From contig OX337233.1 of the NCBI GenBank assembly GCA_946965045.2, positions 3,534,001 to 3,598,000 of the forward strand: a stretch of 64,000 bases of DNA. Reading direction: 5' to 3'. Positions 1 through 58,639 of the stretch are shown here, in pieces. The DNA comes from Epithemia pelagica. Lineage: Eukaryota > Protista > Bacillariophyta. The notes under the pieces were generated by a model. The model had not been told where the DNA came from. It saw nothing but the letters and a program-made list of their open reading frames with translations, and did not search any database. A program made the translations under genes and the position numbers. Within the stretch, counting starts at the first letter, position 1. Every line of letters starts with the position of its first letter.

Positions 1-1
1 T

Positions 2-601
2 AGATTATTCCAGTCAGGGGTTATATCTGCTCCAGCAACCGTGGAAGTTGCCAAAATGTTTGGAATGAACGCGTTCTCAAGTCTGTTCTCAGAGAGTGGC
101 CGGTTTTATCAATGTGCAGAACGCATCGTAAACGCGGCAGACTATTTCATTCAACGACACGATGGTCGCATACCATCTAACATTTCCTTGCAAGAACTTC
201 TTACTCTCCCTGAAGTAGGATATAAAACGGCCGCAATCACCCTCGCGTACTCTTTTGGACGGGTTGAAGCAATCCCATCCGATGTGCATGTCATCAGATG
301 CTGCCAATTACTTGGCTGGATCCCCAAATCCTGTAACGATGGAATGCTCTGTTCCCTATTCTTGGAATCTTGGTTAGTCAACGAAGTATGGGGCGAGATT
401 AATCCTCTTTTCGGTGCCATTGGGCAAATTTTCAATGTGCCTGCATTGAAATTAGAGAGTTGCAGGATTCTGTCAGAGTATTCATCCAACTTTGATGGGA
501 ACGACGTTGACTCAACAATATACAACACCGATGTTACACAGAAGCAAATGACCTACATGCATAATCAAGTCGTCACTATCATACGAGGCTATGGGAAGTG
601 A
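2..601 (+). CDS. Endonuclease III-like HhH-GPD DNA glycosylase/AP lyase, cargo of hAT element 1 (5'-truncated by window edge)
   Basis: Helix-hairpin-helix LLTLPEVGYKTAA with catalytic Lys and IPSDVH with catalytic Asp (cf. Nth LPGVGRKTA...VDTH). Frame is open back to nt 2 (RLFQSGVISAPATVEVAK), matching the paralog at 51297-53207. No C-terminal 4Fe-4S Cys motif. Confidence 0.85.
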   Translation, partial: RLFQSGVISAPATVEVAKMFGMNAFSSLFSESGRFYQCAERIVNAADYFIQRHDGRIPSNISLQELLTLPEVGYKTAAITLAYSFGRVEAIPSDVHVIRCCQLLGWIPKSCNDGMLCSLFLESWLVNEVWGEINPLFGAIGQIFNVPALKLESCRILSEYSSNFDGNDVDSTIYNTDVTQKQMTYMHNQVVTIIRGYGK

Positions 602-752
602 CGATAAAAAGTTTCCTACTAATATTGTTTTTCTTACTTGCGACTACGTCTGTCCTAAATGGTTAGTATTCGATATTCTTCGATTTCTGTTTCTTGTTTT
701 CTGTTTTTTCAGTTGATGCTTCTCGTGTACTCTGTCATTATACATTCGGTCT

Positions 753-3700
753 TCAATCCTTGTTCAATCGAGGTGATCGACGTGGTGAGTCGACTACATC
801 ACCATTACCGTTTTGATCAGTACGAGCTGGAGTGGATTGCCCGACTGACTGGACTGACTGGGATATTGCCGTTGGAGCTGTCGTTGCGGCTGGAGCTGAA
901 GCTGGAACTGGAGCAGTCGATGCCCCAGTGTCAATAGACCGCCTTGCTTCTGTGGTTGAAGTTTGTGGAGGTGTTTTGCCTGTTGCAGTGTGTTCTGCCA
1001 TTACCTGTTCAGGGGGCGCCTTCTTTGCTCCAAACCGCAAAGCCAACGATTGCTGTTTCATTTTACGTTTCTTCTGTGAAGAAAGGCCGGTTCTTTTGGT
1101 TTTACTTGTACTTCCCTTTCGCTTTTGGGAACTGGTCTGTACCTTTTTGGAAACTGATGCTGATTGCGAATGGAACGAAGAACTTTCCGTAACCTTACTT
1201 GCGTTTGCCAAACTCTGCTCACCTGTGACTGATTGCTCTCCAGTGGCACAAAGTCGGAGACTTTGCTGCAGTGCTTGAAGTTTCTGAAGTTCCGTTTTCC
1301 GTTCTTCCACAACTTCGACCATTCTCTCGTCCGAATCCTCATTATCTTTCTCTCCTTCAATCTTTCTGTTCAATGCTTCCATCTGTTCCCTATCAGTTTT
1401 ATCCTGTACCAAGTCAATCAGTTCCACATCATCCCATTCTTCTACCTTTTCCTCGTTGTTATCGCCCAGTTTCTTGAATTTGTACGTTTGCCCGGACACT
1501 CCATTCTCTAAAGCACTTCCTTGAACGACAAATCCTTGTAGGTCCGTTGTTCCGTCTAAAATCTTCTCGAGCCGTCCTAGCTCACCTTGTGTTGATGAAT
1601 CACTCACTTCCACTATTTCACGGGCAGTATCCATTACTTCGATAGCACCTTCATGTGTAGAACCATCCTCCACTCCTGTCACAGCAGCAGCAGCAGCAGC
1701 AGCAGCTCTACGACCTTTTGGTTTGGCTTTGGAAGTGGTTTTGCGTAACTCTGGTTTCACTTTGTTGTTAGACATGTCCTTTTCTCTTTCGCTTATTGTT
1801 TTCCGGATTGGACGACTTAGACTCTCGATGGTTCTCAATTCAAAAACCTTGTTGCCTTGTCGATTCATTAGTGGATTCCTGTCGAACCAAGAGCTGGTAG
1901 AAAAAACTCTCTCTTGATACGCATTCGTTGCTGGTTTCGAAATCCATATGATTGCACTAGGAAAAATCTTGGGAAACTGTGTGCGATTGGCCATCCACCA
2001 CTGCATCACATTGAAGTATTGCGCCACGTCATGGAACTCTTCCTTGGCACAGGCGGTGAGAAACTCATCTTGCTCCTCATCTGTCCATGTCTGGGAACGA
2101 GCATCATACAGGGGTGTTGGAAATTGTTGGATAAGGTCTGCCCATGAGTGCGAAACTACAGTCTCACAAAAATTAAGATAGGCACCGAATTCATTGTCAC
2201 ATTGCTTGTAGAATTTTGCTCTTTCTGTCTGATCTCGTCCATTCCCCGCTGCTTGGCCAGTCATAGAAGTTAGTGTGGCATGTTCTCTTTCTCTAGTCCT
2301 TCGGTGTGCTTTGAAAATGTTGAATGCATCCATCACGTTAGCAACACTGTTTGTTGGTTGCGCTTGACTTGCGTCTCTTAAATCATCAGTACTGGCGTTG
2401 TCCTCCACATGAGGTGTTTCTTGAGTGCTTCCAGAGACAGAGGATGTTGACGATGTTGGAGATGTAAATTTTTGTACCACATCCATGACAAACTGGCGAC
2501 GAATCCTTTTGATGTCGTTGTCGTCATAAACTTCTATGTCCTCCTTCATTATAGATGGTCCAAGATAGCACAGAAACGGGTGACCAAGCATGGCATGTTC
2601 TGCATGAACATCATCCCCTTCCATCATGTAGGTCTTGTATTCGATCAAAATCCTATCAATCAGTTTCTTTGTTGATTCGAGTGCGTCATTATAGGGCAAC
2701 ATGGTCCGCTTCGATTGCAATGAGTGGATTGTTTCCGATGCATCCCAGGGTGTCACTCCTGGAGCATCTCTGTCCAGTACCAGAACCGGTATGCCCTTTT
2801 CTTTCATGATTTCAACACAAAACTTGCTGTTGTAAATTTCCAACAAGGATCCTGCCGAGGCAGAAGGATCATCCACTTGCAGTGACATGGCACATTTCTT
2901 CAACGGTAATAGAACACCTTCAAACTCTGCAAGGGCTTGCCATTCACTCTCTTTAGGGTACTTTGAGACAAAGTCCTTGTCTTTGTTTGTCTCAAAACTC
3001 TGTTGGTTTTTGTATGCATCCATGGTATGCTTGTCCCGAAAGAGGTCATGCGTCATAATGATGCATCCTGTTACTCTGGTTGTATTAGGCATTTGGATCT
3101 TGATTATGTGTCGGTGATTCTTTTGAGCATATTCTTTAAGACGCTGGAATCGCTTGGGGGACCGGGAACTCATAAGCCAGGATGAGAACTTGAAAAAGAT
3201 TTGATATATCTTCATAAAGGAAGGATTGCTGTCGATTACTTCCCCATGCCTCTTGCGTACTGCTAGACCGGTGGCGTGTTTGAGTATCAATTCCGCTCTG
3301 TGCATGTCGCACTTTCCACCACTGTTGTTTCCAATAATGTATTTGCCAGCAAGGACGGCGGAATTAGTGTTGTCGTTCACAGAACTGCACAAGTCAGTCT
3401 GTGTGAACGAAACATTCTTCAGGATTTTAGCCGTATGTTCCGCAACCTGGACAGCAGTATGCCCTTTGACATTAGCAAGACCAATGGGGATTTTATAGTT
3501 TTCACCGTTTCTTGGATCAGTGAAGACCAGGGTTATCCCCAAAATATCCTTGTTGTTGCCTTGCCATATGTCGTGACATATGGTGGCAAAGGCAATGGGC
3601 TTTCCGCATAACAAGGCATATGCGGCTCTAACCTTATTTCCCAACATGGTCACTGTTGCGACAAACTCATTGTATGATAGCAACCGCATTTTTGTTATTG

Positions 3701-4715
3701 CCTTGTTGCTGATTTCACAGTCCTTGGGAGAAAGTTTTGGGGCATTGGCTATTGCACATTGCAGTAGTTCTCGGAAAGAGTCTTTCTCCACAGTTCGAGC
3801 AGGGAATCCGTTGTCGTTCACAAACCTGTATATGGCTTGGTGAAGTAAGGACTTGGCATCCGAGCGAGATACCATTGTTCCAGAGTATTGCTTCATCGTT
3901 GATTGTGTAGGATCATTATTGGTATCATCATCTTTCAAACTTGCGCTGATGTGAGGGTGTTTAGCATCGTGGTGTTGCTTGATGTTGGAGGAAATGCCAT
4001 CACCCAGGCCAAGAAGACACTCGTCAAGGGATTTATTGGGGTTCTCAAAACATAGAGGGCAGACAACCATCCTCTTGTTAATGGTCTTATAAGTGTCGTT
4101 TTCACGTATGTCATCTTCGGAGGCCTGTTCTAACATGTCAAAACAGCGAAGGAGACCCTCCATTCTCAAAAGACTGTCCTCGGAAATCTTGCCTTTGTGT
4201 GTCGACAGCTTCTTGTAGTCAATGTATCGAACCGTGCCCCAAAAAGATCTGTAGAAATTACGAAATTGTTTTGATCTTGCAATAGATTGGAACGAAATGA
4301 ACGACTTTTCAAGTTTTATTTCTTCTCTTCGTTCGGGAGAAACAGATTCATCGTCTTCGTTATCGTTGTCGTTGTTTTCGTTGTTCATATTGAGATTCAC
4401 GTTGTCTGATGGATTGGTGTTGTTGTTAGTTGCACGGTTGTTGGGAACTGATGATTCCAAAGATGAAACAGAAGCTCGGCGAGATTGTCCTCTTGTGTTG
4501 GTAGGGGGCGGGGACATTGCAATGGTTGGAGGAGAAAGAGTTGAAACAGCCGGTGAATTATTGATACTCGTTATGACAAGCCCCAAGAGACCCTGAGACA
4601 TGTGGGTGAGAAGTGAGAAGGTCTCTGGAGTCTCGAATATGCAAAACAGTTGGTGAGTTGGGAGTGGGAAGCACCTCTTTTCTATACAGACTGGAAACTG
4701 GCAACTGATGGTCAC
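753..4715 (-). CDS. hAT-superfamily transposase (element 1)
   Basis: BED-like Zn finger (CPLC...HHDAKH), D1 CHDIWQ, D2 VNDNTN, CxxH (CDMH), TRVTG at the usual TRWNS position, C-terminal PATNAYQERVFS with catalytic Glu. True ATG probably 4601 or 4517. Confidence 0.9.
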   Translation of the reverse strand: MTISCQFPVCIEKRCFPLPTHQLFCIFETPETFSLLTHMSQGLLGLVITSINNSPAVSTLSPPTIAMSPPPTNTRGQSRRASVSSLESSVPNNRATNNNTNPSDNVNLNMNNENNDNDNEDDESVSPERREEIKLEKSFISFQSIARSKQFRNFYRSFWGTVRYIDYKKLSTHKGKISEDSLLRMEGLLRCFDMLEQASEDDIRENDTYKTINKRMVVCPLCFENPNKSLDECLLGLGDGISSNIKQHHDAKHPHISASLKDDDTNNDPTQSTMKQYSGTMVSRSDAKSLLHQAIYRFVNDNGFPARTVEKDSFRELLQCAIANAPKLSPKDCEISNKAITKMRLLSYNEFVATVTMLGNKVRAAYALLCGKPIAFATICHDIWQGNNKDILGITLVFTDPRNGENYKIPIGLANVKGHTAVQVAEHTAKILKNVSFTQTDLCSSVNDNTNSAVLAGKYIIGNNSGGKCDMHRAELILKHATGLAVRKRHGEVIDSNPSFMKIYQIFFKFSSWLMSSRSPKRFQRLKEYAQKNHRHIIKIQMPNTTRVTGCIIMTHDLFRDKHTMDAYKNQQSFETNKDKDFVSKYPKESEWQALAEFEGVLLPLKKCAMSLQVDDPSASAGSLLEIYNSKFCVEIMKEKGIPVLVLDRDAPGVTPWDASETIHSLQSKRTMLPYNDALESTKKLIDRILIEYKTYMMEGDDVHAEHAMLGHPFLCYLGPSIMKEDIEVYDDNDIKRIRRQFVMDVVQKFTSPTSSTSSVSGSTQETPHVEDNASTDDLRDASQAQPTNSVANVMDAFNIFKAHRRTREREHATLTSMTGQAAGNGRDQTERAKFYKQCDNEFGAYLNFCETVVSHSWADLIQQFPTPLYDARSQTWTDEEQDEFLTACAKEEFHDVAQYFNVMQWWMANRTQFPKIFPSAIIWISKPATNAYQERVFSTSSWFDRNPLMNRQGNKVFELRTIESLSRPIRKTISEREKDMSNNKVKPELRKTTSKAKPKGRRAAAAAAAAVTGVEDGSTHEGAIEVMDTAREIVEVSDSSTQGELGRLEKILDGTTDLQGFVVQGSALENGVSGQTYKFKKLGDNNEEKVEEWDDVELIDLVQDKTDREQMEALNRKIEGEKDNEDSDERMVEVVEERKTELQKLQALQQSLRLCATGEQSVTGEQSLANASKVTESSSFHSQSASVSKKVQTSSQKRKGSTSKTKRTGLSSQKKRKMKQQSLALRFGAKKAPPEQVMAEHTATGKTPPQTSTTEARRSIDTGASTAPVPASAPAATTAPTAISQSVQSVGQSTPARTDQNGNGDVVDSPRRSPRLNKD

Positions 4716-5179
4716 TGGTCACTGGTCACTTCATTCATGTCTTGAATGAGTGATGAGTGGCGAAACATGTCGAGAGGCGAGAGGAATATCAAGCAACATG
4801 TGGAACGAAAGAAGTGATCTTAGTGTGTGTTAGGAAGTAATTGACTGGAGTATATTGTAGGCTGGTAGGAGAGAACAAAGAAAATTGGAAATAGATTTGT
4901 ACAGAAAAGTTGGAACCGATGACTATGAGAATAGACTTTTGATAGTAAGTCAGAGGAGAATTGCGAGGAAATTGAATGCAACTTAGGGAAATTATGCTGA
5001 ATGTAAAGTTGCAATTTATCGACGAAAAGTCATAGAAATATTCGTTGCGAATGAATTATAGACACGAAGTTGGTAAAAAAAGGGGGGGAAATGAACTAAA
5101 AATGGTGAAAATGCAACTTTTTTGGTAAAAATATTTGGAAATTGGAAAATGGCCAAGTTCAACTTCCACACCCTGATCC

Positions 5180-19695: not shown

Positions 19696-20270
19696 GGATA
19701 TATCTTTACCAAATAATACTATTTCAGGTCCGTCGTTCGTTGTTTGATCTCGTTTCGCTCGCTCGTTCACTTTGGATTGTTGTTGTTGTTATATTTCAAA
19801 CTCTTGACCACAACCAACACTCTTGTTTCGACCAGCGAAGAAAATGGGCCGCTGAATTCTCCAAAAAAGTGAGCAGCCAAAGGTAGCCCACCGTCGGCGA
19901 TTGGACGGCGATCCAGACTCGTTCCGTTCACTTATGGAAGGAGGTGCCAGGTAGTCTTGCGTGCCTTTTGCGTCCTAAGTACTATCGGATTACGCGCCTG
20001 CATCTCTACTCGCAAAATTTTTCCAGCGATGCGCGCGGGGGGAGGTGCGTTTTCGTCCTCACGCTCACAGACTGTCGTGCACCTCGGGCACGGCGAGTCC
20101 CGAGCAAGAGGGACTCAAAACCGGGACCCGGATCGGTACGACTCGAGGTCCATCATCGAGACTCGGTTTTGGTGAACCTCTCGTCGTCTTCTTCTTCTCC
20201 TCCTTTGGATCCACAAATAAGAGAACAACAACCTCAAACCACAACCTTTCCGAACAGAACAGCAGCAAGA

Positions 20271-22121: not shown

Positions 22122-22486
22122 GAATAGTAATCCTTGGGACCTGTAGAATAGAATGCAAAGTGCTTTGGCTTGCCTTTCTCTTTTAACTGAGAAAGGGTGC
22201 TATAATTGTCTTTCTTTCCCCTAATATAGACCGCGGATGGTTCACTGGATATGGAATAGATCCGTCCGTGGCCATTCCTGTGACGGTGAGGGACCTTGCA
22301 CCTTCGCCCGGCGATAGTCATTTCAAAACAAAACACTTAACAATCACCTATGGGACTTGGATTGGGCTTATGTCTTATGGCCGTTTGGCGCCATGCGAAC
22401 ACCGACTGATCAGATGCACCGCATCACATCATCATCTATTCTTTCTCAATTCTCACCGAGAACAAAAAAGCGAAGCGAAAGGGACA

Positions 22487-31836: not shown

Positions 31837-33171
31837 TTGACCATGGACGCTGCGGATGAAGACAACATCAACGCCCCAAAGCGATGTCGGGTTTTCATTC
31901 CCAACAAAAGGAAGGTGGAGATCTGCAACAAACTGAGGAGAGGTCGTAGATTGGATGCCAACTTTTCTTTAAAAAAGCTGGCAAGAGATGAAGATGTGGA
32001 TCCCTCTCAGTTGAGACGATGGATGAAGCAAATGCCAACGCTCCTACAGGCTTGCCACGATTCCAAGAAGTCGAAGTTCTCTGTCCACTTTGGTCGGAAG
32101 ACAACCTTTCCGAAGGCAGATGAACTGGTGGACAAGATCATGGATTTGAGAGAGTCTGGAATGCCAGTGTCCACCAACATGGCTGTCATAATGGCATGCC
32201 AGATGGACAACAACTTGCGTCGCAAGAGCTCTACAGCTAAGTATGCAATAATCAGACGCATTCTCCGTGCCAAGGGTATTGTGATCAGATCAAAGACCCA
32301 CGAGGCGCAAACCCATCCCAGAGAAAAGCAAGAAGAAGCCAAGCAGTTTGTCCAGTCTGTCCTTCCATTGATTCAACAGCCATGTCGTCATAAAGACTTC
32401 ATTGCGAATATGGACCAGACCCCTGTGTTTTTCTCAATGACTCCTAACACTACACTTGAAACACAGGGGTCGAGAAGTGTACATGTAAGGGCGTCCAGTG
32501 GGAGTACAATGAGGGTGACGCTGGCTGTGTTTGTGACTGCAAATGGAGAGATGCTCCCCCCCTACATGGTTTATAAAGGTAAAGCCAATGGAAGAATCAA
32601 CAGAGAGTTTACAGATGATAAGAACGACTATCCCAAGGACTGCTTTTATGCAGCACAGCCAAAAGCGTGGATGGATGAGCGTATTTGTCTTGAGTGGGCA
32701 GAGAAGGTGGTGAAACCATGGGCGCAGAAAGCCCCAGAAGGAATTACCCCCTTGTTGTTCCTTGACTCTTACAAGTGTCATTTGATGTCATCTGTGAATA
32801 CTGCCATTGAGGAACTCGGAGTTGAAGTGGAGTACATCCCTGGTGGATGTACTTCCCTTTGCCAACCAGTTGATGTTGGTATCAACAAGCCGCTCAAAAA
32901 TCGGATTAGAGCGGCCTGGGAGCAATACATGTTGGAGGAGGGACTTGCACAGGATAAGACAACTCCTCCAAGTCGTCCTACCATTGCCAAGTGGTGTGAG
33001 ATGGCTTTAAAGGAATTGGATGGGGATATCATTAGGCATGCCTGGCGACATGGAGAATACTCATTTTTTCCTGGGGAGGTTGCTCCATCTACACCGACAG
33101 AAACAATCCAAGAATTGGAAGATAGTATGCAAGAACTCAGTTTGTCAAGTGACAGTATTTCTATTGATTAA
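31837..33171 (+). CDS. pogo/Tigger-type transposase (CENP-B-like HTH + DD35D)
   Basis: ANMDQTP, LFLDSYKCH and CQPVDVGINKPLK, with 35 residues between the 2nd and 3rd Asp; N-terminal HTH region. Confidence 0.92.
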   Translation: MTMDAADEDNINAPKRCRVFIPNKRKVEICNKLRRGRRLDANFSLKKLARDEDVDPSQLRRWMKQMPTLLQACHDSKKSKFSVHFGRKTTFPKADELVDKIMDLRESGMPVSTNMAVIMACQMDNNLRRKSSTAKYAIIRRILRAKGIVIRSKTHEAQTHPREKQEEAKQFVQSVLPLIQQPCRHKDFIANMDQTPVFFSMTPNTTLETQGSRSVHVRASSGSTMRVTLAVFVTANGEMLPPYMVYKGKANGRINREFTDDKNDYPKDCFYAAQPKAWMDERICLEWAEKVVKPWAQKAPEGITPLLFLDSYKCHLMSSVNTAIEELGVEVEYIPGGCTSLCQPVDVGINKPLKNRIRAAWEQYMLEEGLAQDKTTPPSRPTIAKWCEMALKELDGDIIRHAWRHGEYSFFPGEVAPSTPTETIQELEDSMQELSLSSDSISID

Positions 33172-36232: not shown

Positions 36233-36838
36233 ATGAAGTCCGCCATCTTTGCCTCCCTCATCGCCACTGCTGCCGCTTTCGCCCCTGCCTCCCAGAAGGC
36301 CTCTTCTTCGGCCTTGAAGGCTTTCGAAGACGAATTGGGTGCCCAAGCTCCTCTTGGTTTCTTTGACCCCCTTGGCCTTGTTGCCGATGGTGACCAAGAA
36401 AAGTTCGACCGCCTTCGTTACGTCGAGATCAAGCATGGCCGCATCTGTATGTTGGGTGTTGTCGGATACTTGGTCAACGCCGCCGGTATCTACCTCCCTG
36501 GTGATATTGACTACTCGGGTACCAAGTTCTCCGACCTTGGATACGGATGGGATGCTTCTTTCTCGGTCCCTGTTGCCGGTGCCCTCCAAGTCCTTGCCTT
36601 TGTTGGTTTCTTGGAACTTTTCGTCATGAAGGACTCTGCCAACGGTGCCGAACCCGGTGAATTCGTTGGTGACTTCCGCAACGGTGCTCTTGACTTTGGC
36701 TGGGACTCCTTTGACGAGGAAACCAAGCTCACCAAGCGTGCCGTCGAATTGAACCAAGGCCGTGCCGCCCAAATGGGTATGTTGGCCCTCATGGTTCACG
36801 ACAAGCTTGGAAATGTCGAAGACTTCTTCCCCAACTAA
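36233..36838 (+). CDS. lhcf: Fucoxanthin chlorophyll a/c-binding protein (Lhcf), copy B
   Basis: AAAFAP presequence, EIKHGRICML, ELNQGRAAQMG. Confidence 0.97.
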   Translation: MKSAIFASLIATAAAFAPASQKASSSALKAFEDELGAQAPLGFFDPLGLVADGDQEKFDRLRYVEIKHGRICMLGVVGYLVNAAGIYLPGDIDYSGTKFSDLGYGWDASFSVPVAGALQVLAFVGFLELFVMKDSANGAEPGEFVGDFRNGALDFGWDSFDEETKLTKRAVELNQGRAAQMGMLALMVHDKLGNVEDFFPN

Positions 36839-50361: not shown

Positions 50362-50846
50362 AATTGTCGAGCAACGCATTTGACACAAAGCTGATTCGCC
50401 GAGTTCAGTGGATGGACTTGAAGCAGCTTGCATTTTTGAAAGTCGCAAGACACTAGACACATAAACATAGAGAAGATATAATAGACAAGCGACAAGTTTG
50501 ATTACAACAGACAACAGGAGTATTGTTTCACGGTAAAAGTATGAGATCATGGTCGGTTTTGTCTCGTATACAAATGTGTCGGAGCACAGCTACCGGTACT
50601 TCCATCCCAATCGGCGGAAGAAGTACTCCTCCTCTTTGCTCAATCTACAAAACAAACAAGTACCAACAGTAGTGTTTAGTTCGGGGAGCTAGAGTGTACC
50701 AGAAGTATACGACATTGTGTCCCATGATGTGGTACACCCACCATTTAATTATATACGACCAGAACAGCCGCACCGAAACGGAAACTCCCGAACGCTTCGG
50801 TGTATGAATGCGCAATTGCCTGCAATGGCCACAGCACGTTCTCGAT

Positions 50847-50854
50847 ATCTCAGG
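50847..50854. repeat. 8-bp target-site duplication ATCTCAGG, left copy (right copy 57644-57651)
   Basis: An identical octamer lies immediately outside both TIRs. Confidence 0.95.
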
Positions 50855-51296
50855 CAGGGTTGTGAAGTACCTTAACGACATATATGAATACAATTAGTGT
50901 AATATATCCTGCGACCAAAAATAGTAGGATAAATTAATATGATATAATTCATATCTATCTACCTTTATGAATTTCATTTTTTCAAATATTCATTGCCTAT
51001 AAAACCATTGAACTTCATTTCGGTTATATATTCATTTCTGAAAATCTAACGGAATTAATTTCTCTCATTAATTACTTCCTATAATTATGTCTTATTTCAC
51101 TTTACTTAATTAAATGATGTGAATTAATTCTGCTCATTTTAGTAATTATATTCATTCCATTGTGTTTCACACACAATATCGCTATGGCTACGTGACTCGT
51201 GACCGATCCAGTCATGTTACAGGACTGTAGGAGAGAACAGTACTTCCGAGGTGCTGCTTTTGCATCAACGCCTCACTTGTTGAACACCATGGCACC

Positions 51297-53207
51297 ATGG
51301 CACTTGCTTCCCGTCCAAATGTTATTTTCGAATCGAAATGCTTTCCCCAATACCTCATGCATTGCAACCCTTCTTTATATACCATATTGATTGAATTGAA
51401 AGGCACAATGGCCTCGCAAAATCCTTCTGTCTCCCAAACATTACATGCCATTCAACGAAAAACCATACACTGGCTCATCCGTGTTGGTGGTCAAATCGAA
51501 TGTCCTCAACATGATACTGCCACACACAAATGCTGTATTCCCACTCTCTCTTTCCAAGATAAGCTCGACTTGATTTCCAGTATCATCCATCATACTCTTT
51601 TCCGAGGAACCCCCATCGCCAAGGACCCTTCCTTTCCTACTCAACACTATTGCATTGTGGATCAGCCCACTGCTTGCACGACCATCATTCTATCTCTTCG
51701 GTGCAATACACAATTTACAATTGTTGAAAACAATGCAATGACTGACTGTCTTCATTTCATAGAACACCAGCGCACGGTTTGTCCTACCACTTCTATCCGT
51801 TCTCTTGTCACATCTTGGATGATCAGGAAGATGCCCCTTATTTGTGTCCGTCAAAGACCACAAGAAATGGATGGGTTCAATGTCCTTGATTTACCCATTT
51901 CTCCAAGAGATGAATGTTCACCTCAAACCGAGTTCTACATCCCCTCGACTGCAGCTCCTTTCCTTTCCTTGCTCGAGGATCATGCGAGCGCCACCACCTC
52001 TTGTGTCGCATCAGAAGAGGAAATAGAAATTGTTCATCCCAACCCTACACCAAATTGTCATGCAACAGGAATAACAAGTTATCAATCACCTCTTCGATCT
52101 CCAACTCCTCCGCAACAACCAACCCACAGTCTTCAATCTTCATACGAGACTCCCCAACGGCCACAGGATCTGACCCACTCCGTATCAACTATGGCTGATG
52201 TTGCTACTCATTCACCCAAAAAGCAAAGAACCTTGAATCAAAACCTGTTTCCGGCTCATCGGTATTCAACTAGAGGTCAGAATGGTAAGATCACTGAATA
52301 CCTTCTGTCCATGTCACGGTCGAAGAAAACAATTCAGTATGTTGATGGCCAGACACAGAGACACATGCCCGGAGAAAAACCACTCCTCAAACAACACACA
52401 GAGACTCATGTACCACTTCCTGATTACGACAAACATCCAGAACTCAAACTGGAGCGGATTCTACAATTTTATTCCCTTCTAAACTTTTGGGAACCCTTGA
52501 AGAAGGACGGAATCGATGTTCCTCGCGATTCCTGGGAGGATTGGGTGGATTCATCTATTTCCCTAGATGACCCACAGGCCGACAGAGCTTTCATGTTCCT
52601 GATGACAATCTGCATGAGCTCCAGTACCTCAGATGCTCAGCTCAGCACCATCATGCCGCGCGTGTTTTCATTTGGATTAACTTCTGCCACTGCCGTATCG
52701 GATATTGCTCAAAAATTTGGAATGAATGCTTTCTGTTCCATCCTCTCTGAAGCAGGCCTTTTCTACAAAAACACTGAATGCATTCTCAATGCCGCTGATT
52801 ACTTTATACAACAATATAATGGCACGGTTCCCCCCAACATATCCATCGAAGAGCTCTCTACTTTGTATGGGATTGGGTATAAAACGGCTGCGATAGTGGT
52901 TGAAGCCTCTTTTGGTCGAACCGACGGAATTCCTTCGGACATCCATGTGATGCGATGGAGCAAGTATTTGGGCTGGACTGCAAGTACATCGAATGGCTAT
53001 CATTGCTCTAAAGAATTGGAATCCTGGGTTCCCCGACATTTCTGGAATAGAGTCAATCCACTGCTTGGGTCACTCAGCCAAATGGCTGTGTCTTCTGAAG
53101 CACCCAAAGTTCGAGAGCTCCTTGTAGAGTACAAGCATATGTGCCCTGACTTCAAAGCCAAGGTATTGAGTCAATTCGACAGATATACTAAGAAGAGAAA
53201 GTTGTAG
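51297..53207 (+). CDS. Endonuclease III-like HhH-GPD DNA glycosylase/AP lyase with ~400-aa unassigned N-terminal region; hAT cargo
   Basis: FLMTICMSSSTSD (cf. Nth LIAVILSAQATD), ELSTLYGIGYKTAA (HhH + Lys), GIPSDIHVMR (Asp), LESWVP..W..VNPLLG; no 4Fe-4S motif. Confidence 0.88.
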   Translation: MALASRPNVIFESKCFPQYLMHCNPSLYTILIELKGTMASQNPSVSQTLHAIQRKTIHWLIRVGGQIECPQHDTATHKCCIPTLSFQDKLDLISSIIHHTLFRGTPIAKDPSFPTQHYCIVDQPTACTTIILSLRCNTQFTIVENNAMTDCLHFIEHQRTVCPTTSIRSLVTSWMIRKMPLICVRQRPQEMDGFNVLDLPISPRDECSPQTEFYIPSTAAPFLSLLEDHASATTSCVASEEEIEIVHPNPTPNCHATGITSYQSPLRSPTPPQQPTHSLQSSYETPQRPQDLTHSVSTMADVATHSPKKQRTLNQNLFPAHRYSTRGQNGKITEYLLSMSRSKKTIQYVDGQTQRHMPGEKPLLKQHTETHVPLPDYDKHPELKLERILQFYSLLNFWEPLKKDGIDVPRDSWEDWVDSSISLDDPQADRAFMFLMTICMSSSTSDAQLSTIMPRVFSFGLTSATAVSDIAQKFGMNAFCSILSEAGLFYKNTECILNAADYFIQQYNGTVPPNISIEELSTLYGIGYKTAAIVVEASFGRTDGIPSDIHVMRWSKYLGWTASTSNGYHCSKELESWVPRHFWNRVNPLLGSLSQMAVSSEAPKVRELLVEYKHMCPDFKAKVLSQFDRYTKKRKL

Positions 53208-53322
53208 TAGTTTTCCTTCTACTTTTTTAATGTAACTTCAATCCACGTAATACTAATTCTTGTTAATCTCTCTTTGTTCTTGTTAATCTCTCCCGTCGTC
53301 ATTACATCATCACCTTGGAGTC

Positions 53323-56300
53323 TTAATCTTCATGATGATCATTATCTTCATGATCATTCTCTTCTTCCGCATCTGAATCGGACTCTAACTCTTTCAAGAC
53401 ATCGACAATTTTGTCGTATTCGGACTTATCATTCACACCCTCATCTTCATCGTCCTCTGCATCATATTCCCGATCATCCTTCGGTGCACCCTTTCTCTGT
53501 TTGACAAGTGTCCTAATGTCCCCTTGACGCCGACCACCTTTGTCTTGTTGTTTCTCATCTATCTTTGGAGCGCACGGAGAACCCACCTGCAGTTTGTCAT
53601 GTCTCTTAGTTTTGGCTTTGCGAGGAGGAGACCTACGAGTTGGCAGGAGCTTTTGTTGTTTTGTTTTCTTACGAGAAGATCCAGTTCCACTGCCACTGCC
53701 CTTACGCTTGACCCCAGTGGTGTCTTCTGCAATAGTGAGATTAATCGTGTCCTGCACTACCGCATCCTCCAGTCCTTTCAACTCATCATCAAATACCTTG
53801 TTCATGGCGGCGTCGCTATCTTCGTCATCATCGTTGTCACTCTCGTCCGCAGATGAGTGTGGTGCTGAATCGTCATCTGGATGTCTGTCAAACCGCACTA
53901 CTTTCACAGTGTCCCATTCAATGGGTTTCTTTTTTCCTTCTTGGACCAACTTTGAAAGCCGTTGTGCATGTTGAACTCTTTTCTTTTTCGCCATTTCAGC
54001 CCGGGCTTCTGGTGTTTCCAAACTTCCAATAACCTGCTGCAAGTCATCTTCATCGCTATCGTCACTGAGGTCTTCAAAATATTGGAAGTGTACTGACGCA
54101 TCATTAGTGACACGATCCTTTTCGGCGTCTGCCTTCTTATTGTAGGCAATAAAGCCCTGAGTTGCATCTCTCATGCCACTCATTTGCACCAGGGCCATTT
54201 GTTCTGTTGAGACTTTTTCCTTGACAGGTGGCGTCTTGGTATTTACTGTCCTCCCTTGTTCTGAACCCTCTTGTGCAGTACCGGCTTCTTCCGAGATGCC
54301 GACTCCGACATAATGGCTTTGAGGTTTGTCGGAGGCCATCTGAAGCTCCATCTCCCTCTTAACAATCTCTCGTTTAATAGACCGCGTAAGACAATCAATG
54401 CTTCTCATTTCAAAATGTTTTTTGAGCAGGTTAGCCATCAGCTTGTTCTGTTGGAACCACGTTCCCAAAGAAAAAATACGCTCTTGAAACGCATTAGTAG
54501 ATGGTTTGGTCAACCAAATCATGGCCATGACGTACATCATAGGAAATTCTTTCTTGTGTGAATTCCACCAGGCCATGATATCGAAATATTTGCCAATCTG
54601 GCAATAGTTGCCGTTCCGACACGCTTTATGAAAGAAGGACTTTTGTTCATCGTTCCAATCTGGTTCCTCATTCTTGTACAGCTCAGTAGGATATTGGGCG
54701 ATTACTTCGGCCCACTTTTTATCCACGTGAACACCACACATTCTTTTGAAAGCGTCAATCGACTCTTGACACGCGTTTTTCAAAGCTAATAAGACTTCAG
54801 TCTCTGAACCAGCCAGGGATGCAGCACCAGAGATCTGCAGAAGGGCCTGTTCCTTCAGTTCTCTGGTGCGACGCATCGATTCGAAGATGTCTTCTTCTTG
54901 ATAGCGTTCTTTTTTCTTGGATCCGGCTTTGGATCCTGCTTTGGATGCAATTGGAGGAGTCATTGGGTTGTCGGTTTGTTCGTCGGAGTCTTTGTCGGAT
55001 GGTTTTTGTTGCTTGTGGATAAGAGCACCAATAGGACTAGCCGTCCCACTGCTAAACTTTTTCATCATGTCGTCCAAGAAAACTTGGCGGGCTTTGCGTA
55101 CCTTCTCCGAGTCGAACGCAGCAAGAAATTGGAAGGTATCTTCGTAAATATTTGCCAACATAGGGTTGCAGCAGACTGCCTTCAAAGCATCTTCGTCCGT
55201 ATCAAGAAGATACATACGGTACTCATGAAGAATGCGGCGAATGAGTTTCCTGGGTCCATCACCCAGCTCATGATACGCCACTCCGACGCGCAATGAGTTT
55301 AGTTCACTAATGGTTGCAGAAGCATCCCATTTCTCGTCTTCTTCCAGATCAACTTCGTTCACCGGAATGCAGGCCACTTTGCTCATCCTCATGCGTTCTG
55401 TTTGGAAGTGCGAAAGGTAGATTTCCAACAGCGTTGCCGAACTAGCGCCTGGGTCGTCAGATTGCAACGAGAGTCCAACTGCCTTCAATGGGCTCAAGAT
55501 GCCTTCGTATTGTGCTAGAAGTTCCCATTCATCTTCAGTTGGATAAAGCCGAACAAAAGTTGGGTCACTTGCTTTCGAAGTGAGGACATACAAGTCGAAG
55601 AACCATTTGTTGCGCAGAAAGGCTTGAATCAGAATGATGCAGCCCATAACGCGAGTGTCGTTAGGAATGGGTAGTAAGATCAGATGGTATCCCAGTTCTT
55701 CTGCCTTTTTCTTAAGCTTTTCCCAACGATGAAAGGCATGCTTGCTTGTCACCCAACCACCCAGTTTTTTGAATTTTCCATATAGGTCGCAAAAGTCAGG
55801 GAAAGAGTCAATGAGAACTCCTTTCCTATACCTTTCTACGAGTCCTGTAGCATGCTTGAGGACCAACTCGGCCCTATGCATATCACACCGACCTGCCTTG
55901 GAATGATCACCCACAATGTACTTGCCCGCCAGTACCGCGGCCGACGTATTGTCGTTAACCGAAGCAATTAGGTCGTCTTGGTTGAAACCAACAGACAGCA
56001 AGAGTGAGTGTGTCAGGTTGGCTACATCAGCGGCCGAATGCCCTTTGGTTTCGGCCAAACCAATAGGGATTCGGTAGACGACACTGTTTCTTGGGTCACT
56101 GAACATTAATGTGACTCCTAATACGTCATGCCGTCTTGCCTGCCAAATGTCATGGCAAACCGTCGCGAAGGGTATTTCCTGACCGCATAGAGTCTTGTAT
56201 TCTTCGCGAACATTTCTAGCAAGTGCAGCAACGGTCGACACGTAGTCCTTATAGGAATCGACACGCAACTTTGTCACTTGTCGCCTGCTCATCGCTTCGG

Positions 56301-57129
56301 CCCGGGTGTCTTTAAGCTGTCCCCCATTGTTGAATGCATATCGGAGCAATTCGCGAAATTGGGGCTTTTCGACGGTGCTCGCAGGCAAACAACAATCATT
56401 AACGAATTCGTAGATAAGTTGTTGCAATTGACCAATGGCTTTCTTTCGGGGAGAAACTTCTGCCGTGAAACCTTCAAGTGTTGTTTGGTTCAATTTGTCT
56501 TCGATCACAACTCCAAATACTTTTTCATCGCCACCATGATGTGTATCTGTGTGCTGTTTCACATTGGAAGGCTTGTTATCGCTGCAACTAATGCAACATT
56601 TCGCCAAAGGGATGTCCGGGTTTTTGAAACAAAGTGGACAAATTACCATTCGATGAGAAAGTGGCTTGTACTTGTCCTTGTATTCCTTGTTAGAAAGTTC
56701 TCCTTCAGGATCAACTGGTAGAGGATTTCCATCATTATCATATTCGGCTTCTTGTTGTGGGGGTACTCCAAGGTAATCCTCCATGAGGTCGTGGAGCTTC
56801 ACAAACCCTTTGAAGGTAGCGGGAAGATCTCTGACTGTGCCGTCCCAAAGCCATTTGAAAAATGCCTGCCAATCAACATGGAGAACCCAATCCCAACGTT
56901 TTGAAGGACTGTTCGAAAATAGAAGTTTGGGTTTCCCTTGATGAAGAGGGATGAGCTCTTTTTCGGCAAGGATGCGTTCTTGTTTTGCTCGGACTTGATC
57001 TTCTATCTCTTCTTGGACGACTTTGTTACGGGCAGCAACCGCAGACGCCTTCATCTTGGGAGGAGGAGGCTTCTTTTTCGAAGGCTTTTTGGAGGTAGGC
57101 GACATGGAAGTTGTTGTTGTCAAGATCAA
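53323..57129 (-). CDS. hAT-superfamily transposase (element 2)
   Basis: CPLC...HTDTHH Zn finger, CHDIWQ, VNDNTS, CDMH, TRVMG, PSTNAFQERIFS; acidic/basic tail; probable ATG 57105. Confidence 0.92.
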   Translation of the reverse strand: MILTTTTSMSPTSKKPSKKKPPPPKMKASAVAARNKVVQEEIEDQVRAKQERILAEKELIPLHQGKPKLLFSNSPSKRWDWVLHVDWQAFFKWLWDGTVRDLPATFKGFVKLHDLMEDYLGVPPQQEAEYDNDGNPLPVDPEGELSNKEYKDKYKPLSHRMVICPLCFKNPDIPLAKCCISCSDNKPSNVKQHTDTHHGGDEKVFGVVIEDKLNQTTLEGFTAEVSPRKKAIGQLQQLIYEFVNDCCLPASTVEKPQFRELLRYAFNNGGQLKDTRAEAMSRRQVTKLRVDSYKDYVSTVAALARNVREEYKTLCGQEIPFATVCHDIWQARRHDVLGVTLMFSDPRNSVVYRIPIGLAETKGHSAADVANLTHSLLLSVGFNQDDLIASVNDNTSAAVLAGKYIVGDHSKAGRCDMHRAELVLKHATGLVERYRKGVLIDSFPDFCDLYGKFKKLGGWVTSKHAFHRWEKLKKKAEELGYHLILLPIPNDTRVMGCIILIQAFLRNKWFFDLYVLTSKASDPTFVRLYPTEDEWELLAQYEGILSPLKAVGLSLQSDDPGASSATLLEIYLSHFQTERMRMSKVACIPVNEVDLEEDEKWDASATISELNSLRVGVAYHELGDGPRKLIRRILHEYRMYLLDTDEDALKAVCCNPMLANIYEDTFQFLAAFDSEKVRKARQVFLDDMMKKFSSGTASPIGALIHKQQKPSDKDSDEQTDNPMTPPIASKAGSKAGSKKKERYQEEDIFESMRRTRELKEQALLQISGAASLAGSETEVLLALKNACQESIDAFKRMCGVHVDKKWAEVIAQYPTELYKNEEPDWNDEQKSFFHKACRNGNYCQIGKYFDIMAWWNSHKKEFPMMYVMAMIWLTKPSTNAFQERIFSLGTWFQQNKLMANLLKKHFEMRSIDCLTRSIKREIVKREMELQMASDKPQSHYVGVGISEEAGTAQEGSEQGRTVNTKTPPVKEKVSTEQMALVQMSGMRDATQGFIAYNKKADAEKDRVTNDASVHFQYFEDLSDDSDEDDLQQVIGSLETPEARAEMAKKKRVQHAQRLSKLVQEGKKKPIEWDTVKVVRFDRHPDDDSAPHSSADESDNDDDEDSDAAMNKVFDDELKGLEDAVVQDTINLTIAEDTTGVKRKGSGSGTGSSRKKTKQQKLLPTRRSPPRKAKTKRHDKLQVGSPCAPKIDEKQQDKGGRRQGDIRTLVKQRKGAPKDDREYDAEDDEDEGVNDKSEYDKIVDVLKELESDSDAEEENDHEDNDHHED

Positions 57130-58639
57130 TTGGCGGTCAGAGGCAGCTTGTGGCTGGTGATGCTATGGATGGAAAGGAATGTGGCTGATTGTTGAACAAG
57201 ATAAAGGTACGATCTTTGGAGGTGCAGCGATCATGTGTTTCATTTCTCATCTGTTTGTTCTTGTGAAACAAATTGTCAGAGGGTCAGTGGGTATCTTGTC
57301 GTCAGTTACTGTGGAAAAACACTGTGATTGTTGCAATAGGACTATTAACTGACAAAGTGTCGGTAAATGATATAATATTCGTAGGATAAGGAGTGAATTG
57401 GGATAAGAACGGAGGCCAGACAATGATGAAGAATATCAGTAGGTAATATATTCCCGTGACGGGAATATGTAGAATTAATTTAAAAAATATATTCATGTGG
57501 AAAAATATGGGGAATTAATATGAAGAATATATTACGTGTATGGTGGTAAAGGGTAATTCATTTGAAGACAGAACTGATGGGTAATTAAATTACCAAAATG
57601 TATCAGATCATTTGAAATATGAATAAGTAACTTCACAACCCTGATCTCAGGGAGTGGTCTGACTAGGACAAACCGTTCGGATCACCACCGAATGGCGAGT
57701 CAATTCGCTGACGCCGTATAAGCGCAAATTTCCGAGTTTGTACGAGCTCCACCTCAACAAAATTGCAGCCGCAGTAGCCCGTGCTATCAAGGCCTCCACT
57801 GTTTTTTCTATAGTGATTCTAGCGTCGTAGGAAGACCACTACGGTCATTTTGCACTGCATAACACCACCATGGACAACAAGAACCGCTGTGCACCTCCAA
57901 CGAAAGGTGCTAGTACTCCTCCGACCATCCAGGATGCCTCAGAATCAAGTGTACCGTGATGGGTGAAAAGGGCGGCATTGAGTTGGCGAGTTTGATGGAC
58001 CTACGGCAAGGTTGTTTGAAGTCTTCCATTTTGGTGTCGGAAGCTCGCGACGAGAAGATCGACTATGGAGATGGATACCGATGGAATGAGCAAAGATTGC
58101 GGGGAGGGAAGTCACCTGAAGCTTTGAAATGGATGGATGAGGCATTGGAGAGCAGCAGCAAGGACACATGGCAATCAACTGGAGGATTCCGAAGCACAAA
58201 CATGACGAGAATCTCTGCAACCACAACGAAGCAAGTGACGATGAAAAGACGACGCCACTGGAGACAATGAATGCAGCAATTCACTTATCGTCCGTCCGCA
58301 TGCAACAATCAACTTCTTGTCTTTGTGTGGTCCGAACACAGCAAATGAAAGCCTCGTCGGGTTGGTTCAAACGCAACAAGCAAGAAAAGTTTGGTTCGAA
58401 CAAACGAGAAAACAAACTCAACCATGGGTGGACAAACTGCTTCTGTCGCAGCCGACAATGGTGCTGCTGCTGCTGCTGATTGTTCGTGTGGAAGAAGGAG
58501 GGGATGCCGTGGAGCTGCGGCAGCGGCAGTCGAAGATGGTGTGGTCGTCCTCCTTCTTCCACCTTGCGACGAAACAATCAACTCCCTGTCTTTTCGTTAC
58601 CCTCACCCAACAAATCGAAGCCTCGTCCAATGGTGAACG

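What the first reader, a model, noticed from the sequence alone, without database searches (positions are those of the whole stretch)
50847..57651. Intact hAT transposon that encodes its own base-excision DNA glycosylase/AP lyase (best candidate novel system)
Seen: perfect TIRs and a perfect 8-bp TSD enclose exactly two intact convergent genes, a hAT transposase and an HhH-GPD enzyme with catalytic Lys and Asp, so the enzyme moved with the element. A diverged sister element at 1-5175 has the same pair. Established: autonomous hATs normally encode only a transposase; HhH-GPD enzymes include Nth, MIG/MBD4 (T:G repair) and the DEMETER/ROS1 5mC glycosylases; diatoms methylate transposons. Inference: the cargo could be an anti-silencing demethylase, a guard against deamination or oxidation damage, or a helper for excision-site processing. 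I know of no described hAT family like this but cannot search the literature.
Basis: partly seen in the sequence, partly recalled or inferred. Interest (0 to 1): 0.93.

Follow-up and report, generated by a model that had tools for sequence, protein, structure and literature searches.

The report
Transposon carrying its own DNA glycosylase
A cut-and-paste jumping gene (hAT type) in a diatom-like alga carries, besides its transposase, a gene for an endonuclease-III-like enzyme that removes bases from DNA; the two genes have been inherited together for a long time, I found no report of such a cargo, and it may let the element remove silencing or damage marks.

Summary
The element spans 50855-57643. 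Its inverted ends are perfect for 14 bp (18 of 20) and it is flanked by a perfect 8-bp duplication, ATCTCAGG. It holds two intact convergent genes. One is a 636-aa protein (51297-53207, +) whose C-terminal half is a confidently modelled fold like NTHL1/endonuclease III, with the catalytic Lys and Asp but no iron-sulfur cluster. The other is a 1260-aa hAT transposase (53323-57105, -) with the full DDE/CxxH set.

The same gene pair, in the same order, was found at all 12 loci with enough flanking DNA:
- this copy and its sister at 1-5175;
- seven other loci of the same genome;
- three contigs from separate environmental metagenomes.

Trees of the two genes share 7 of 7 internal splits. dN/dS for the catalytic domain is 0.07. 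Two 99.96 %-identical copies sit at different sites with different 8-bp duplications, which shows recent transposition.

So the glycosylase is an old, selected part of this hAT clade, not a passenger gene. Its substrate and role are not shown. I favour removal of a methylation-linked base (anti-silencing) over self-repair. No RNA data were available. I found no published description. The scan had already noted this family on other pieces of the same genome.

The parts
50847..50854 (.). Left copy of the 8-bp target-site duplication, ATCTCAGG
   Evidence: Read directly; identical to 57644-57651.
50855..50874 (+). Left terminal inverted repeat; starts CAGGGTTGTGAAGT
   Evidence: pair I3: 20 nt, 90 % complementary, outer 14 perfect. 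Unitigs from other genomic copies join the element exactly at 50855 (loose ends).
50875..51296 (+). AT-rich left subterminal region (GC 32 %) holding the GAATTAAT and ATATTCAT short repeats; presumed transposase-binding sites and glycosylase promoter (inferred)
   Evidence: GAATTAAT occurs 5 times in the two subterminal regions, 0 times in the element interior and 2 times in the rest of the window. GC.
51297..52007 (+). Glycosylase ORF residues 1-237: two tandem copies (1-112, 113-237) of a roughly 110-aa module with a conserved W-[LIM]-[IV]-R motif (W59, W174); fold without a known match
   Evidence: Alignment A3 and its N-terminal blocks. AF2 pLDDT 85-95 over residues 5-190. hhalign of repeat 1 against repeat 2: probability 96 %, E 1e-9. 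No structural match (Z at most 5.3; Atlas features score 0.71). dN/dS 0.36.
52008..52265 (+). Glycosylase ORF residues 238-323: disordered linker rich in Pro/Ser/Thr/Gln
   Evidence: pLDDT 31-36; poorly conserved; composition.
52266..53207 (+). Glycosylase ORF residues 324-636 and stop: NTHL1/endonuclease-III-like HhH-GPD domain without an iron-sulfur cluster. Catalytic Lys529 at 52881-52883, Asp548 at 52938-52940
   Evidence: AF2 pLDDT 95.3, pTM 0.90. Foldseek 7rdt E 1.7e-7. VIA Z 18.1 to NTHL1 and 15.4 to EndoIII. Invariant D, K, D, H. The four Cys of the Nth cluster are absent. dN/dS 0.07.
53323..57105 (-). hAT transposase, 1260 aa from the first Met. Contains a C2H2 BED-like finger (56536-56640), D319 (56149-56151), D385 (55951-55953), CxxH at residues 407-410, E875 (54481-54483), the hAT C-terminal dimerisation region (54463-54672), and a roughly 360-aa acidic, unconserved tail
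   Evidence: Pfam Dimer_Tnp_hAT E 6.2e-7, 29.6 bits, above the 21.4 cut-off. Match to Hermes transposase. Invariant residues among 8 diverged relatives. Codons checked.
57106..57623 (+). Right subterminal region (GC 37 %) with the same short repeats; holds the presumed transposase promoter (inferred)
57624..57643 (-). Right terminal inverted repeat
   Evidence: pair I3. A unitig spans 57617-57742, and another copy's flank diverges at about 57646.
57644..57651 (.). Right copy of the 8-bp target-site duplication, ATCTCAGG
1..5175 (.). Diverged sister element, left part cut by the window edge. Glycosylase C-terminus at 2-601 (+) with Lys and Asp intact; transposase ORF at 753-4715 (-); right end at 5175
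   Evidence: tblastn 51 % and 37 % identity. Translation. End sequence. The full 605-aa glycosylase of this copy is on the same contig (P0176).

Best explanation
SHOWN. This is an autonomous, recently active member of a distinct clade of hAT DNA transposons in a fucoxanthin-type (diatom-like) alga. Every member examined carries two convergent genes. One is a hAT DDE transposase. The other is a protein built of a duplicated N-terminal module of unknown fold, a disordered linker, and a C-terminal domain like NTHL1/endonuclease III. That domain keeps the Schiff-base Lys and the catalytic Asp of bifunctional glycosylase/AP lyases but has lost the 4Fe-4S cluster. The two genes have been co-inherited since the clade's common ancestor, and the catalytic domain is under strong purifying selection. 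The enzyme is therefore a working part of the element's life cycle.

INFERRED (about 35-40 % for this specific mechanism). The protein is made from its own promoter in the left subterminal region, enters the nucleus, flips out a modified pyrimidine and cuts the abasic site. The base is most plausibly methylation-linked: 5-methylcytosine or one of its oxidised or deaminated products. Host base-excision repair then puts back a plain base. This keeps copies of the family transcribable, and secondarily slows their CpG decay. It would be a catalytic counterpart of known transposon anti-silencing devices. The mostly acidic N-terminal module more likely docks the enzyme to a protein partner (the transposase, chromatin or repair factors) than to DNA.
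For: Mobility and intactness:
- TIRs and 8-bp TSD.
- Junction unitigs for this insertion, and other flanks entering the element exactly at 50855.
- L007 and L008 are 99.96 % identical over 6799 bp at different loci, with TSDs TTGTTCAC and ATTCAGGC.
- L001 and L002 have perfect TSDs.

Transposase: Pfam hAT domain, Hermes match, and invariant C2H2, D, D, CxxH and E.

Enzyme:
- 34 family representatives at E below 1e-30, then a gap to Nth-like proteins at 1e-21 to 1e-17.
- Model pLDDT 95.3.
- Nearest structures are NTHL1 and EndoIII.
- Lys, Asp and further residues are invariant across the family and the Nth outgroup.

Linkage:
- The gene pair is present at 12 of 12 loci with flank, three of them from unrelated metagenomes.
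- The ten-taxon trees of the two genes share 7 of 7 internal splits.
- The family is monophyletic against 65 canonical NTH-like proteins.

Selection: dN/dS is 0.07 for the catalytic domain, 0.36 for the N-terminal module and 0.20 overall.

Methylation link (weak):
- 33 of 110 substitutions between this copy and a decaying copy fall on CpG sites, which make up 7.6 % of positions; 22 of 53 transitions are at CpG.
- CpG o/e is 0.77 in the element, 0.85-1.12 in host genes and 0.47 in a pogo element of the same window.

Precedent for transposon-borne enzymes or factors acting on epigenetic marks: TET/JBP in fungal DNA transposons including hAT7, SET domains, and VANC (PMC12730594; PMC5735166). Unchecked scan notes report TET/JBP-carrying transposons in this same genome.
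Against: No activity, substrate or expression data exist: no RNA run was found.

The domain is structurally nearer to NTHL1/EndoIII, which act on oxidised pyrimidines, than to ROS1 (Z 11.7 against 18.1). It lacks the features of DME/ROS1.

The Gln wedge of Nth (LSSQTxD) is replaced by Ser (MSSSTxD), so DNA interrogation may differ in unknown ways.

Copies still show CpG-biased decay, so any protection is incomplete.

The N-terminal module gives no hint of sequence-specific DNA targeting: pI is 4.8-6 in most lineages.

Host 5mC methylation was not shown directly.
Confidence: 0.55

Rival explanations
1. Self-maintenance repair. The enzyme works like ordinary NTHL1 or a mismatch glycosylase. It removes oxidised pyrimidines or deamination products (T:G, U:G, 5hmU:G) and slows the mutational decay of the family's copies, without changing their epigenetic state.
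For: Nearest sequence and structure relatives are NTHL1/EndoIII. CpG sites are the main mutational hot spot in these copies. The elements are less CpG-depleted than the pogo element in the same window (0.77 against 0.47).
Against: A diffusible repair enzyme would benefit the whole genome, and the host should already have canonical NTH-like enzymes. It is then hard to see why selection on the element would keep the gene with dN/dS 0.07. Known T:G enzymes (MIG, MBD4) lack the Lys nucleophile that is invariant here. CpG decay is still seen.
Confidence: 0.2
2. Transposition helper. The glycosylase/AP-lyase nicks or processes DNA at or near the donor or target site. For example, it could create breaks that recruit homologous repair to restore the excised copy, or it could prepare chromatin or DNA for the transposase. 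The N-terminal module would bind the transposase.
For: Strict co-inheritance with the transposase. The N-terminal module is fast-evolving, mostly acidic and lineage-specific, which fits a partner-binding role. The gene arrangement is convergent and tightly packed, with 115 bp between the two stop codons.
Against: Established hAT chemistry (Hermes, Ac) needs no base excision. No other hAT clade has such a gene. No interaction evidence could be obtained here.
Confidence: 0.12
3. Non-catalytic use of the fold. The HhH-GPD domain serves only as a DNA- or lesion-binding module (a reader), for example to tether the element's proteins to modified DNA.
For: Loss of the Fe-S cluster and of the Gln wedge. 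Pfam score below threshold.
Against: The Lys nucleophile, the catalytic Asp and the surrounding GxGxKTA and (S/T)D(I/V)H motifs are invariant over very deep divergence. Pseudo-enzymes usually lose these residues.
Confidence: 0.08
4. Passenger or neighbour. The glycosylase-like ORF is a captured host gene fragment, or an adjacent host gene that happens to lie between hAT ends, with no role for the element.
For: DNA transposons do pick up host fragments (general knowledge).
Against: The gene pair is present at 12 of 12 loci, including three unrelated metagenome contigs. Tree topologies are identical. Purifying selection is strong. The start codon is conserved and the ORF stays open for about 1.8 kb in lineages that share only 30-40 % identity.
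Confidence: 0.03

Closest known systems
hAT superfamily DNA transposons (Ac, hobo, Tam3, Hermes)
   Same: 8-bp target-site duplication. Short TIRs with AT-rich subterminal short repeats. DDE transposase with a BED-like C2H2 finger, a CxxH motif and the hAT C-terminal dimerisation region.
   Different: A second, clade-wide conserved gene. The transposase is about twice the usual length, with a roughly 360-aa acidic tail. Relatives of the transposase were found only in ENA and Logan assemblies, not in NCBI or UniRef proteomes.
NTHL1 / endonuclease III (Nth) bifunctional DNA glycosylase-AP lyases
   Same: Fold (VIA Z 18.1 and 15.4; Foldseek E 1.7e-7). HhH motif with the Lys nucleophile. Catalytic Asp in the (V/S)D(V/I)H motif. 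22-30 % identity to eukaryotic NTH-like proteins.
   Different: No 4Fe-4S cluster Cys ligands. The Gln wedge is replaced by Ser. A roughly 55-aa ordered N-terminal extension, a disordered linker and a duplicated roughly 240-aa N-terminal module are added. It is carried by a transposon. It forms its own clade apart from 65 canonical NTH-like proteins.
DEMETER/ROS1 5-methylcytosine glycosylases of plants
   Same: HhH-GPD enzymes with Lys and Asp, derived from an Nth-like ancestor. They counteract silencing by base excision, which is the role proposed here.
   Different: Structurally more distant (Z 11.7). DME/ROS1 have an Fe-S cluster, a split glycosylase domain and a conserved C-terminal domain; none of these is present here. 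They are host genes, not transposon genes.
DNA transposons encoding TET/JBP dioxygenases in fungi (Kyakuja/Dileera/Zisupton, Plavaka, hAT7 and others; PMC12730594)
   Same: Cut-and-paste transposons, including a hAT lineage, that carry an enzyme acting on DNA bases, interpreted as anti-silencing.
   Different: A different enzyme class (dioxygenase, not glycosylase) and a different host kingdom. The fungal genes were exchanged often between transposon superfamilies, whereas here gene and transposase co-diverge strictly.
VANC anti-silencing proteins of Arabidopsis VANDAL (MULE) transposons (PMC5735166)
   Same: An accessory, fast-evolving, element-encoded protein kept because it counters epigenetic silencing of its own family.
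   Different: VANC is a sequence-specific DNA-binding protein without known catalysis. Here the accessory protein has a complete glycosylase/lyase active site.
Clusterless MutY (MutYX, PDB 8uuc)
   Same: A precedent for an Fe-S-cluster family of HhH-GPD glycosylases losing the cluster while keeping the fold (Z 13.5).
   Different: An adenine glycosylase without the Lys nucleophile; bacterial; not on a mobile element.

Membership tests
hAT superfamily transposon | 8-bp target-site duplication | tested here: met
   ATCTCAGG on both sides. Four other copies also have perfect 8-bp TSDs.
hAT superfamily transposon | Short terminal inverted repeats | tested here: met
   14 bp perfect, 18 of 20. The same CAGGGT start is seen in L001, L002 and L009.
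hAT superfamily transposon | Transposase with the hAT C-terminal dimerisation domain and a DDE triad with CxxH | tested here: met
   PF05699 at 29.6 bits, above the 21.4 cut-off. Hermes alignment. D319, D385, C407-H410 and E875 are invariant.
hAT superfamily transposon | N-terminal BED-type zinc finger | tested here: inconclusive
   C156, C159, H185 and H190 are invariant, but no Pfam BED hit was reported.
HhH-GPD superfamily | Helix-hairpin-helix followed by a Gly/Pro-rich loop and a catalytic Asp; the two-lobed helical fold | tested here: met
   Model pLDDT 95.3. All top structural matches are HhH-GPD enzymes. Asp548 is invariant. The Pfam score alone is below threshold (17.4 against 26.2).
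Endonuclease III / NTH family | Lys nucleophile in the HhH motif (bifunctional glycosylase/lyase) | tested here: met
   K529 sits in GIGYKTA and is invariant in 36 of 36 aligned sequences.
Endonuclease III / NTH family | C-terminal Cx6Cx2Cx5C ligands of a 4Fe-4S cluster | tested here: not met
   The Cys ligands are absent from all members of the transposon family and present in most canonical NTH-like outgroup sequences.
Endonuclease III / NTH family | Excision of oxidised pyrimidines, beta-lyase activity | not testable with these tools
   Needs an enzyme assay.
DEMETER/ROS1 5mC glycosylases | Fe-S cluster, glycosylase domain split by a long insert, conserved C-terminal domain | tested here: not met
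   The domain is contiguous, has no Cys cluster, and the protein ends about 40 aa after the domain. ROS1 ranks 11th at Z 11.7.
MIG / MBD4 mismatch (T:G) glycosylases | Monofunctional: the Lys nucleophile is replaced (general knowledge of MIG and MBD4) | tested here: not met
   Lys is invariant here. MIG Z 14.2 and MBD4 Z 9.1 are both below NTHL1.
Transposon-encoded anti-silencing systems (functional class, not a sequence family) | The accessory gene lowers epigenetic silencing of its own element | not testable with these tools
   Only indirect evidence: CpG-biased decay suggests the copies are methylated. No methylome or expression data.

The most novel reading that the evidence does not exclude
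The hAT-borne enzyme is an independently evolved DNA demethylase. It would be a clusterless NTH-derived glycosylase that excises 5-methylcytosine or its TET-oxidised forms from the family's own copies. Together with the TET/JBP-carrying transposons that unchecked scan notes report in this genome, it would make up a demethylation pathway encoded by transposons rather than by the host.
Probability: 0.25. Interest if true: 0.92.

Novelty: new variant of a known kind. Interest (0 to 1): 0.78.

Why it matters
By general knowledge, hAT elements are single-gene transposons. The known transposon-borne counter-silencing devices are a DNA-binding protein (VANC), SET methyltransferases and TET/JBP dioxygenases. 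A base-excision glycosylase kept under strong selection through the whole history of a hAT clade adds a new class of enzyme to that list. It also extends the idea to a major group of marine algae.

If the substrate is a methylation-linked base, this would be a second, independent origin of glycosylase-based demethylation, known so far from plant DME/ROS1. It would also be a compact enzyme without an Fe-S cluster, of possible use for epigenome editing.

If the substrate is ordinary damage, the case would show that a selfish element can profit from carrying its own repair enzyme, which is also unexpected.

The duplicated N-terminal module is a conserved domain with no detectable relatives.

Tried and rejected
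- **RNA evidence.** The second run search (kind rna) returned only the same three runs of unstated kind, whose long contigs (up to about 500 kb) suggest DNA. Expression and introns therefore could not be tested, and both read-laying runs were used on junctions. No empty-site allele was seen. A stretch spanning both ends would exceed the 6,000-letter limit.
- **Wider sampling.** The environmental evidence therefore rests on three contigs reached through protein look-ups.
- **N-terminal module.** No Pfam hit. The Atlas features score of 0.71 is at noise level. The best structural match has Z 5.3. The Atlas shape search returned only the glycosylase domain. I considered a DNA-targeting domain like VANC and dropped it as the first choice, because the module is acidic in most lineages.
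- **Membership.** DME/ROS1, MIG/MBD4 and canonical Nth were each considered and rejected on tested features.
- **Chance capture or a neighbouring host gene.** Rejected.
- **dS saturation.** dS is saturated for all but the two closest pairs, so dN/dS for deep pairs is not given.
- **Literature.** Five full-text searches found no transposon-borne glycosylase. Repbase Reports and closed journals are not covered.
Full report
**1. The observation**

The window is nuclear DNA of a photosynthetic eukaryote. It has 48 % GC and long intron-poor ORFs. A light-harvesting gene at 36233-36838 has a feature profile that matches fucoxanthin-chlorophyll a/c proteins, most often those of diatoms.

At the coordinates given, an 8-bp direct repeat, ATCTCAGG, lies at 50847-50854 and 57644-57651. 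It brackets inverted ends at 50855-50874 and 57624-57643. These are perfect for the outer 14 bp and match 18 of 20 overall. The terminal 13-mer occurs without mismatch only at these two places in the 64 kb.

Between the ends lie two long convergent ORFs:
- 51297-53207 (+), 636 aa;
- 53323-57129 (-), with the first Met at 57105, giving 1260 aa.

The two stop codons are 115 bp apart.

The sister at the window's left edge is real. tblastn finds the glycosylase C-terminus at 51 % identity and the transposase at 37 % identity, in the same arrangement. The frame at 2-601 is open, with Lys and Asp in place. The right end at 5175 resembles the TIR. The two elements share no detectable nucleotide similarity.

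**2. The junctions in independent data**

Three public runs of the organism hold the element. They are probably DNA, since their contigs reach about 500 kb. Unitigs bridge both junctions of this insertion: 50558-50883 and 57617-57742. Other unitigs match the element from exactly 50855 inward but continue outward into at least four different sequences. On the right side another flank diverges at about 57646. Word depth inside the element (about 300-360) exceeds that of the junction unitigs (about 60-130).

So several near-identical copies exist at other sites, and the element ends where the TIRs say it does.

**3. The transposase**

- Pfam gives the hAT C-terminal dimerisation domain above threshold.
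- phmmer aligns this region, and more weakly the first catalytic Asp region, to Hermes transposase.
- Among eight relatives that share as little as about 37 % identity, 145 residues are invariant. They include a C2H2 pair (C156, C159, H185, H190), D319, D385, C407-x-x-H410 and the Q-E875-R-x-F-S motif.

This is the hAT catalytic set by general knowledge of Hermes and Ac. The last roughly 360 residues are acidic and unconserved.

**4. The second protein**

Pfam alone is weak (HhH-GPD 17.4 bits, cut-off 26.2). A full phmmer search of 1.84 billion representatives with residues 380-636 finds 34 cluster representatives below 1e-30. Most are 500-640 aa long with the match at the C-terminus. After a gap come hundreds of hits at 1e-21 to 1e-17 and about 30 % identity. 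The ones I scanned are ordinary HhH-GPD/HhH proteins, and one has the endonuclease III Fe-S motif.

An AlphaFold2 model of residues 330-636 built on a 36-row alignment has pLDDT 95.3 and pTM 0.90. Its best matches are:

| Structure | Score |
|---|---|
| Human NTHL1 | Foldseek E 1.7e-7; VIA Z 18.1 |
| Endonuclease III | Z 15.4 |
| MIG | Z 14.2 |
| MutY | Z 13.8 |
| ROS1 | Z 11.7 |
| MBD4 | Z 9.1 |

Swiss-Prot models give eukaryotic NTH1 homologues first.

In the alignment the following are invariant across the family and the Nth-like outgroup: the HhH Lys (K529), the Asp of the (S/V)D(I/V)H motif (D548), an upstream Asp (D446), and several Trp, Asn and Gln residues. The four Cys of the Nth cluster are missing from every family member. 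The Gln of the Nth LSSQTxD motif is Ser here.

By sequence and fold this is a clusterless NTH-like enzyme with the residues of a bifunctional glycosylase/AP lyase. Activity itself is not shown.

**5. The N-terminal half**

It is poorly conserved in sequence, yet it stays open in all lineages and starts at a conserved Met. A full-length model gives pLDDT 85-95 for residues 5-190, a disordered stretch at 238-323, and then the enzyme.

The region is a tandem duplication of a roughly 110-aa module with a conserved W-[LIM]-[IV]-R motif. Profile-profile comparison of the two halves gives 96 % probability and E 1e-9. I found no relative by Pfam, language-model features or structure. The module is acidic in most lineages, which argues against a simple DNA-binding role.

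**6. Is the gene part of the element?**

Every family glycosylase whose contig gave at least 3 kb downstream is followed by a convergent hAT transposase:
- this copy and its sister;
- seven more loci of the same assembly, ENA ERZ21939226, to which the window belongs;
- three contigs from unrelated samples: two sediment metagenomes (L009, L013) and a JGI metagenome (L012).

L009 contains a whole element with 14-bp perfect TIRs that also start CAGGGT. L001 and L002 have perfect 8-bp TSDs.

L007 and L008 are 99.96 % identical over 6799 bp, lie on different contigs and have different perfect TSDs. This means transposition was recent.

Maximum-likelihood trees of the transposase and of the glycosylase domain for ten elements have the same topology, sharing 7 of 7 internal splits. 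There are about two million possible topologies for ten taxa.

In a 96-row tree, 23 of the 24 family rows form a clade with SH-aLRT 99, apart from 65 canonical NTH-like proteins. The divergent P0033 and the outsider P0045 sit just outside it.

Nei-Gojobori dN/dS between this copy and the L007 lineage is 0.20 overall, 0.36 for the N-terminal module and 0.07 for the catalytic domain. Deeper pairs are saturated at synonymous sites.

The gene was therefore acquired once, before the clade diversified, and has been kept by selection acting on the element.

**7. Distribution and prior knowledge**

All relatives of both proteins come from ENA assemblies, Logan assemblies or JGI metagenomes. JGI labels them 'endonuclease III'. 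None is held by NCBI or UniRef.

Five full-text literature searches found no transposon that carries a DNA glycosylase. A December 2025 paper that lists transposon-borne epigenetic counter-measures names VANC, SET-domain genes and TET/JBP dioxygenases, including a fungal hAT7 lineage, but no glycosylase (PMC12730594).

The scan itself had already noted this family on other pieces of the same genome, and two follow-ups reached the same structural conclusion. I repeated the key tests independently on this copy.

**8. Mechanism**

Shown:
- a mobile element;
- an intact transposase;
- an accessory protein with an intact NTH-type active site;
- strict co-inheritance of the two genes;
- purifying selection.

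Inferred: what the enzyme does for the element.

Two weak observations link the family to cytosine methylation. First, 33 of 110 differences between this copy and a decaying 98 %-identical copy (L006: right end truncated, transposase broken) fall on CpG sites, which cover 7.6 % of positions; 22 of 53 transitions are at CpG. Second, CpG o/e is 0.77 in the elements, against 0.85-1.12 in host genes and 0.47 in a pogo element nearby.

Unchecked scan notes also report MULE, Plavaka and Ginger-like transposons with TET/JBP-like genes in this genome. If true, transposons here repeatedly recruit enzymes that act on modified bases.

I therefore rank the explanations as follows:
- removal of a methylation-linked base (anti-silencing), about 35-40 %;
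- self-repair of oxidised or deaminated bases, about 20 %;
- a helper role in transposition, about 12 %;
- a non-catalytic reader, about 8 %;
- a passenger gene, about 3 %.

Against the first choice, the enzyme resembles NTHL1 more than ROS1, and nothing is known about its substrate pocket.

**9. Verdict**

The element is a member of the hAT superfamily by all tested criteria. Its cargo belongs to the HhH-GPD superfamily and is NTH-like, but it fails the Fe-S criterion of canonical endonuclease III and the criteria of DME/ROS1 and MIG/MBD4.

I class it as a new variant of a known kind: a hAT transposon with a new class of long-kept accessory enzyme. The function is open and directly testable.

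Noticed in passing
window 57742-58000: Just right of the insertion, summed unitig depth jumps to 4,400-7,700, and several loose ends sit at 57741/57742. This suggests a high-copy repeat starts there, so the hAT copy may have landed next to or inside another repeat.
   Followed up: no
L006:7546-14201 (same genome, ctg1298l): A copy 97.8 % identical to this element is truncated at the position equivalent to window 57529 and has a broken transposase (1160 + 43 aa), while its glycosylase ORF is still open. The same truncation point appears as a loose end in the reads at 57529.
   Followed up: partly
window 51663 -> 53868: One low-depth unitig in run X3 joins these two points, skipping 2204 bp (most of the glycosylase gene and the transposase 3' end). 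It may be an internal-deletion derivative, but the shorter side is only 24 letters.
   Followed up: no
window 5180-28208: There is a cluster of at least five paralogous Kelch-repeat genes (5180-6289, 9200-10450, 11490-12740, 22268-23638, 26931-28208), interspersed with an arrestin-domain gene at 19944-22121.
   Followed up: no
window 31837-33171: A pogo/Tc1-type DDE_1 transposase ORF has strong CpG depletion (o/e 0.47), much lower than the hAT elements or host genes. Another scan note reports a convergent cargo gene beside it.
   Followed up: no
L009:78-6527 (sediment metagenome contig): This is a complete relative with 14-bp perfect TIRs and dense subterminal repeats of a different motif (TCACTTAAGTGA-like). 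The 8 bp on its two sides do not match, perhaps because the assembler joined flanks of different copies.
   Followed up: partly
proteins P0045, P0056, P0037: Other clusterless, divergent HhH-GPD proteins lie between the transposon family and canonical NTH. P0045 and P0056 share the family's PR(D/E)xW motif upstream of the domain. P0037 (796 aa) matches in two stretches.
   Followed up: no
window 50587: Unitigs in all three runs match the left flank up to 50587 and then continue into a different sequence for about 250 nt. This may be a haplotype difference or another repeat boundary 268 bp left of the insertion.
   Followed up: no
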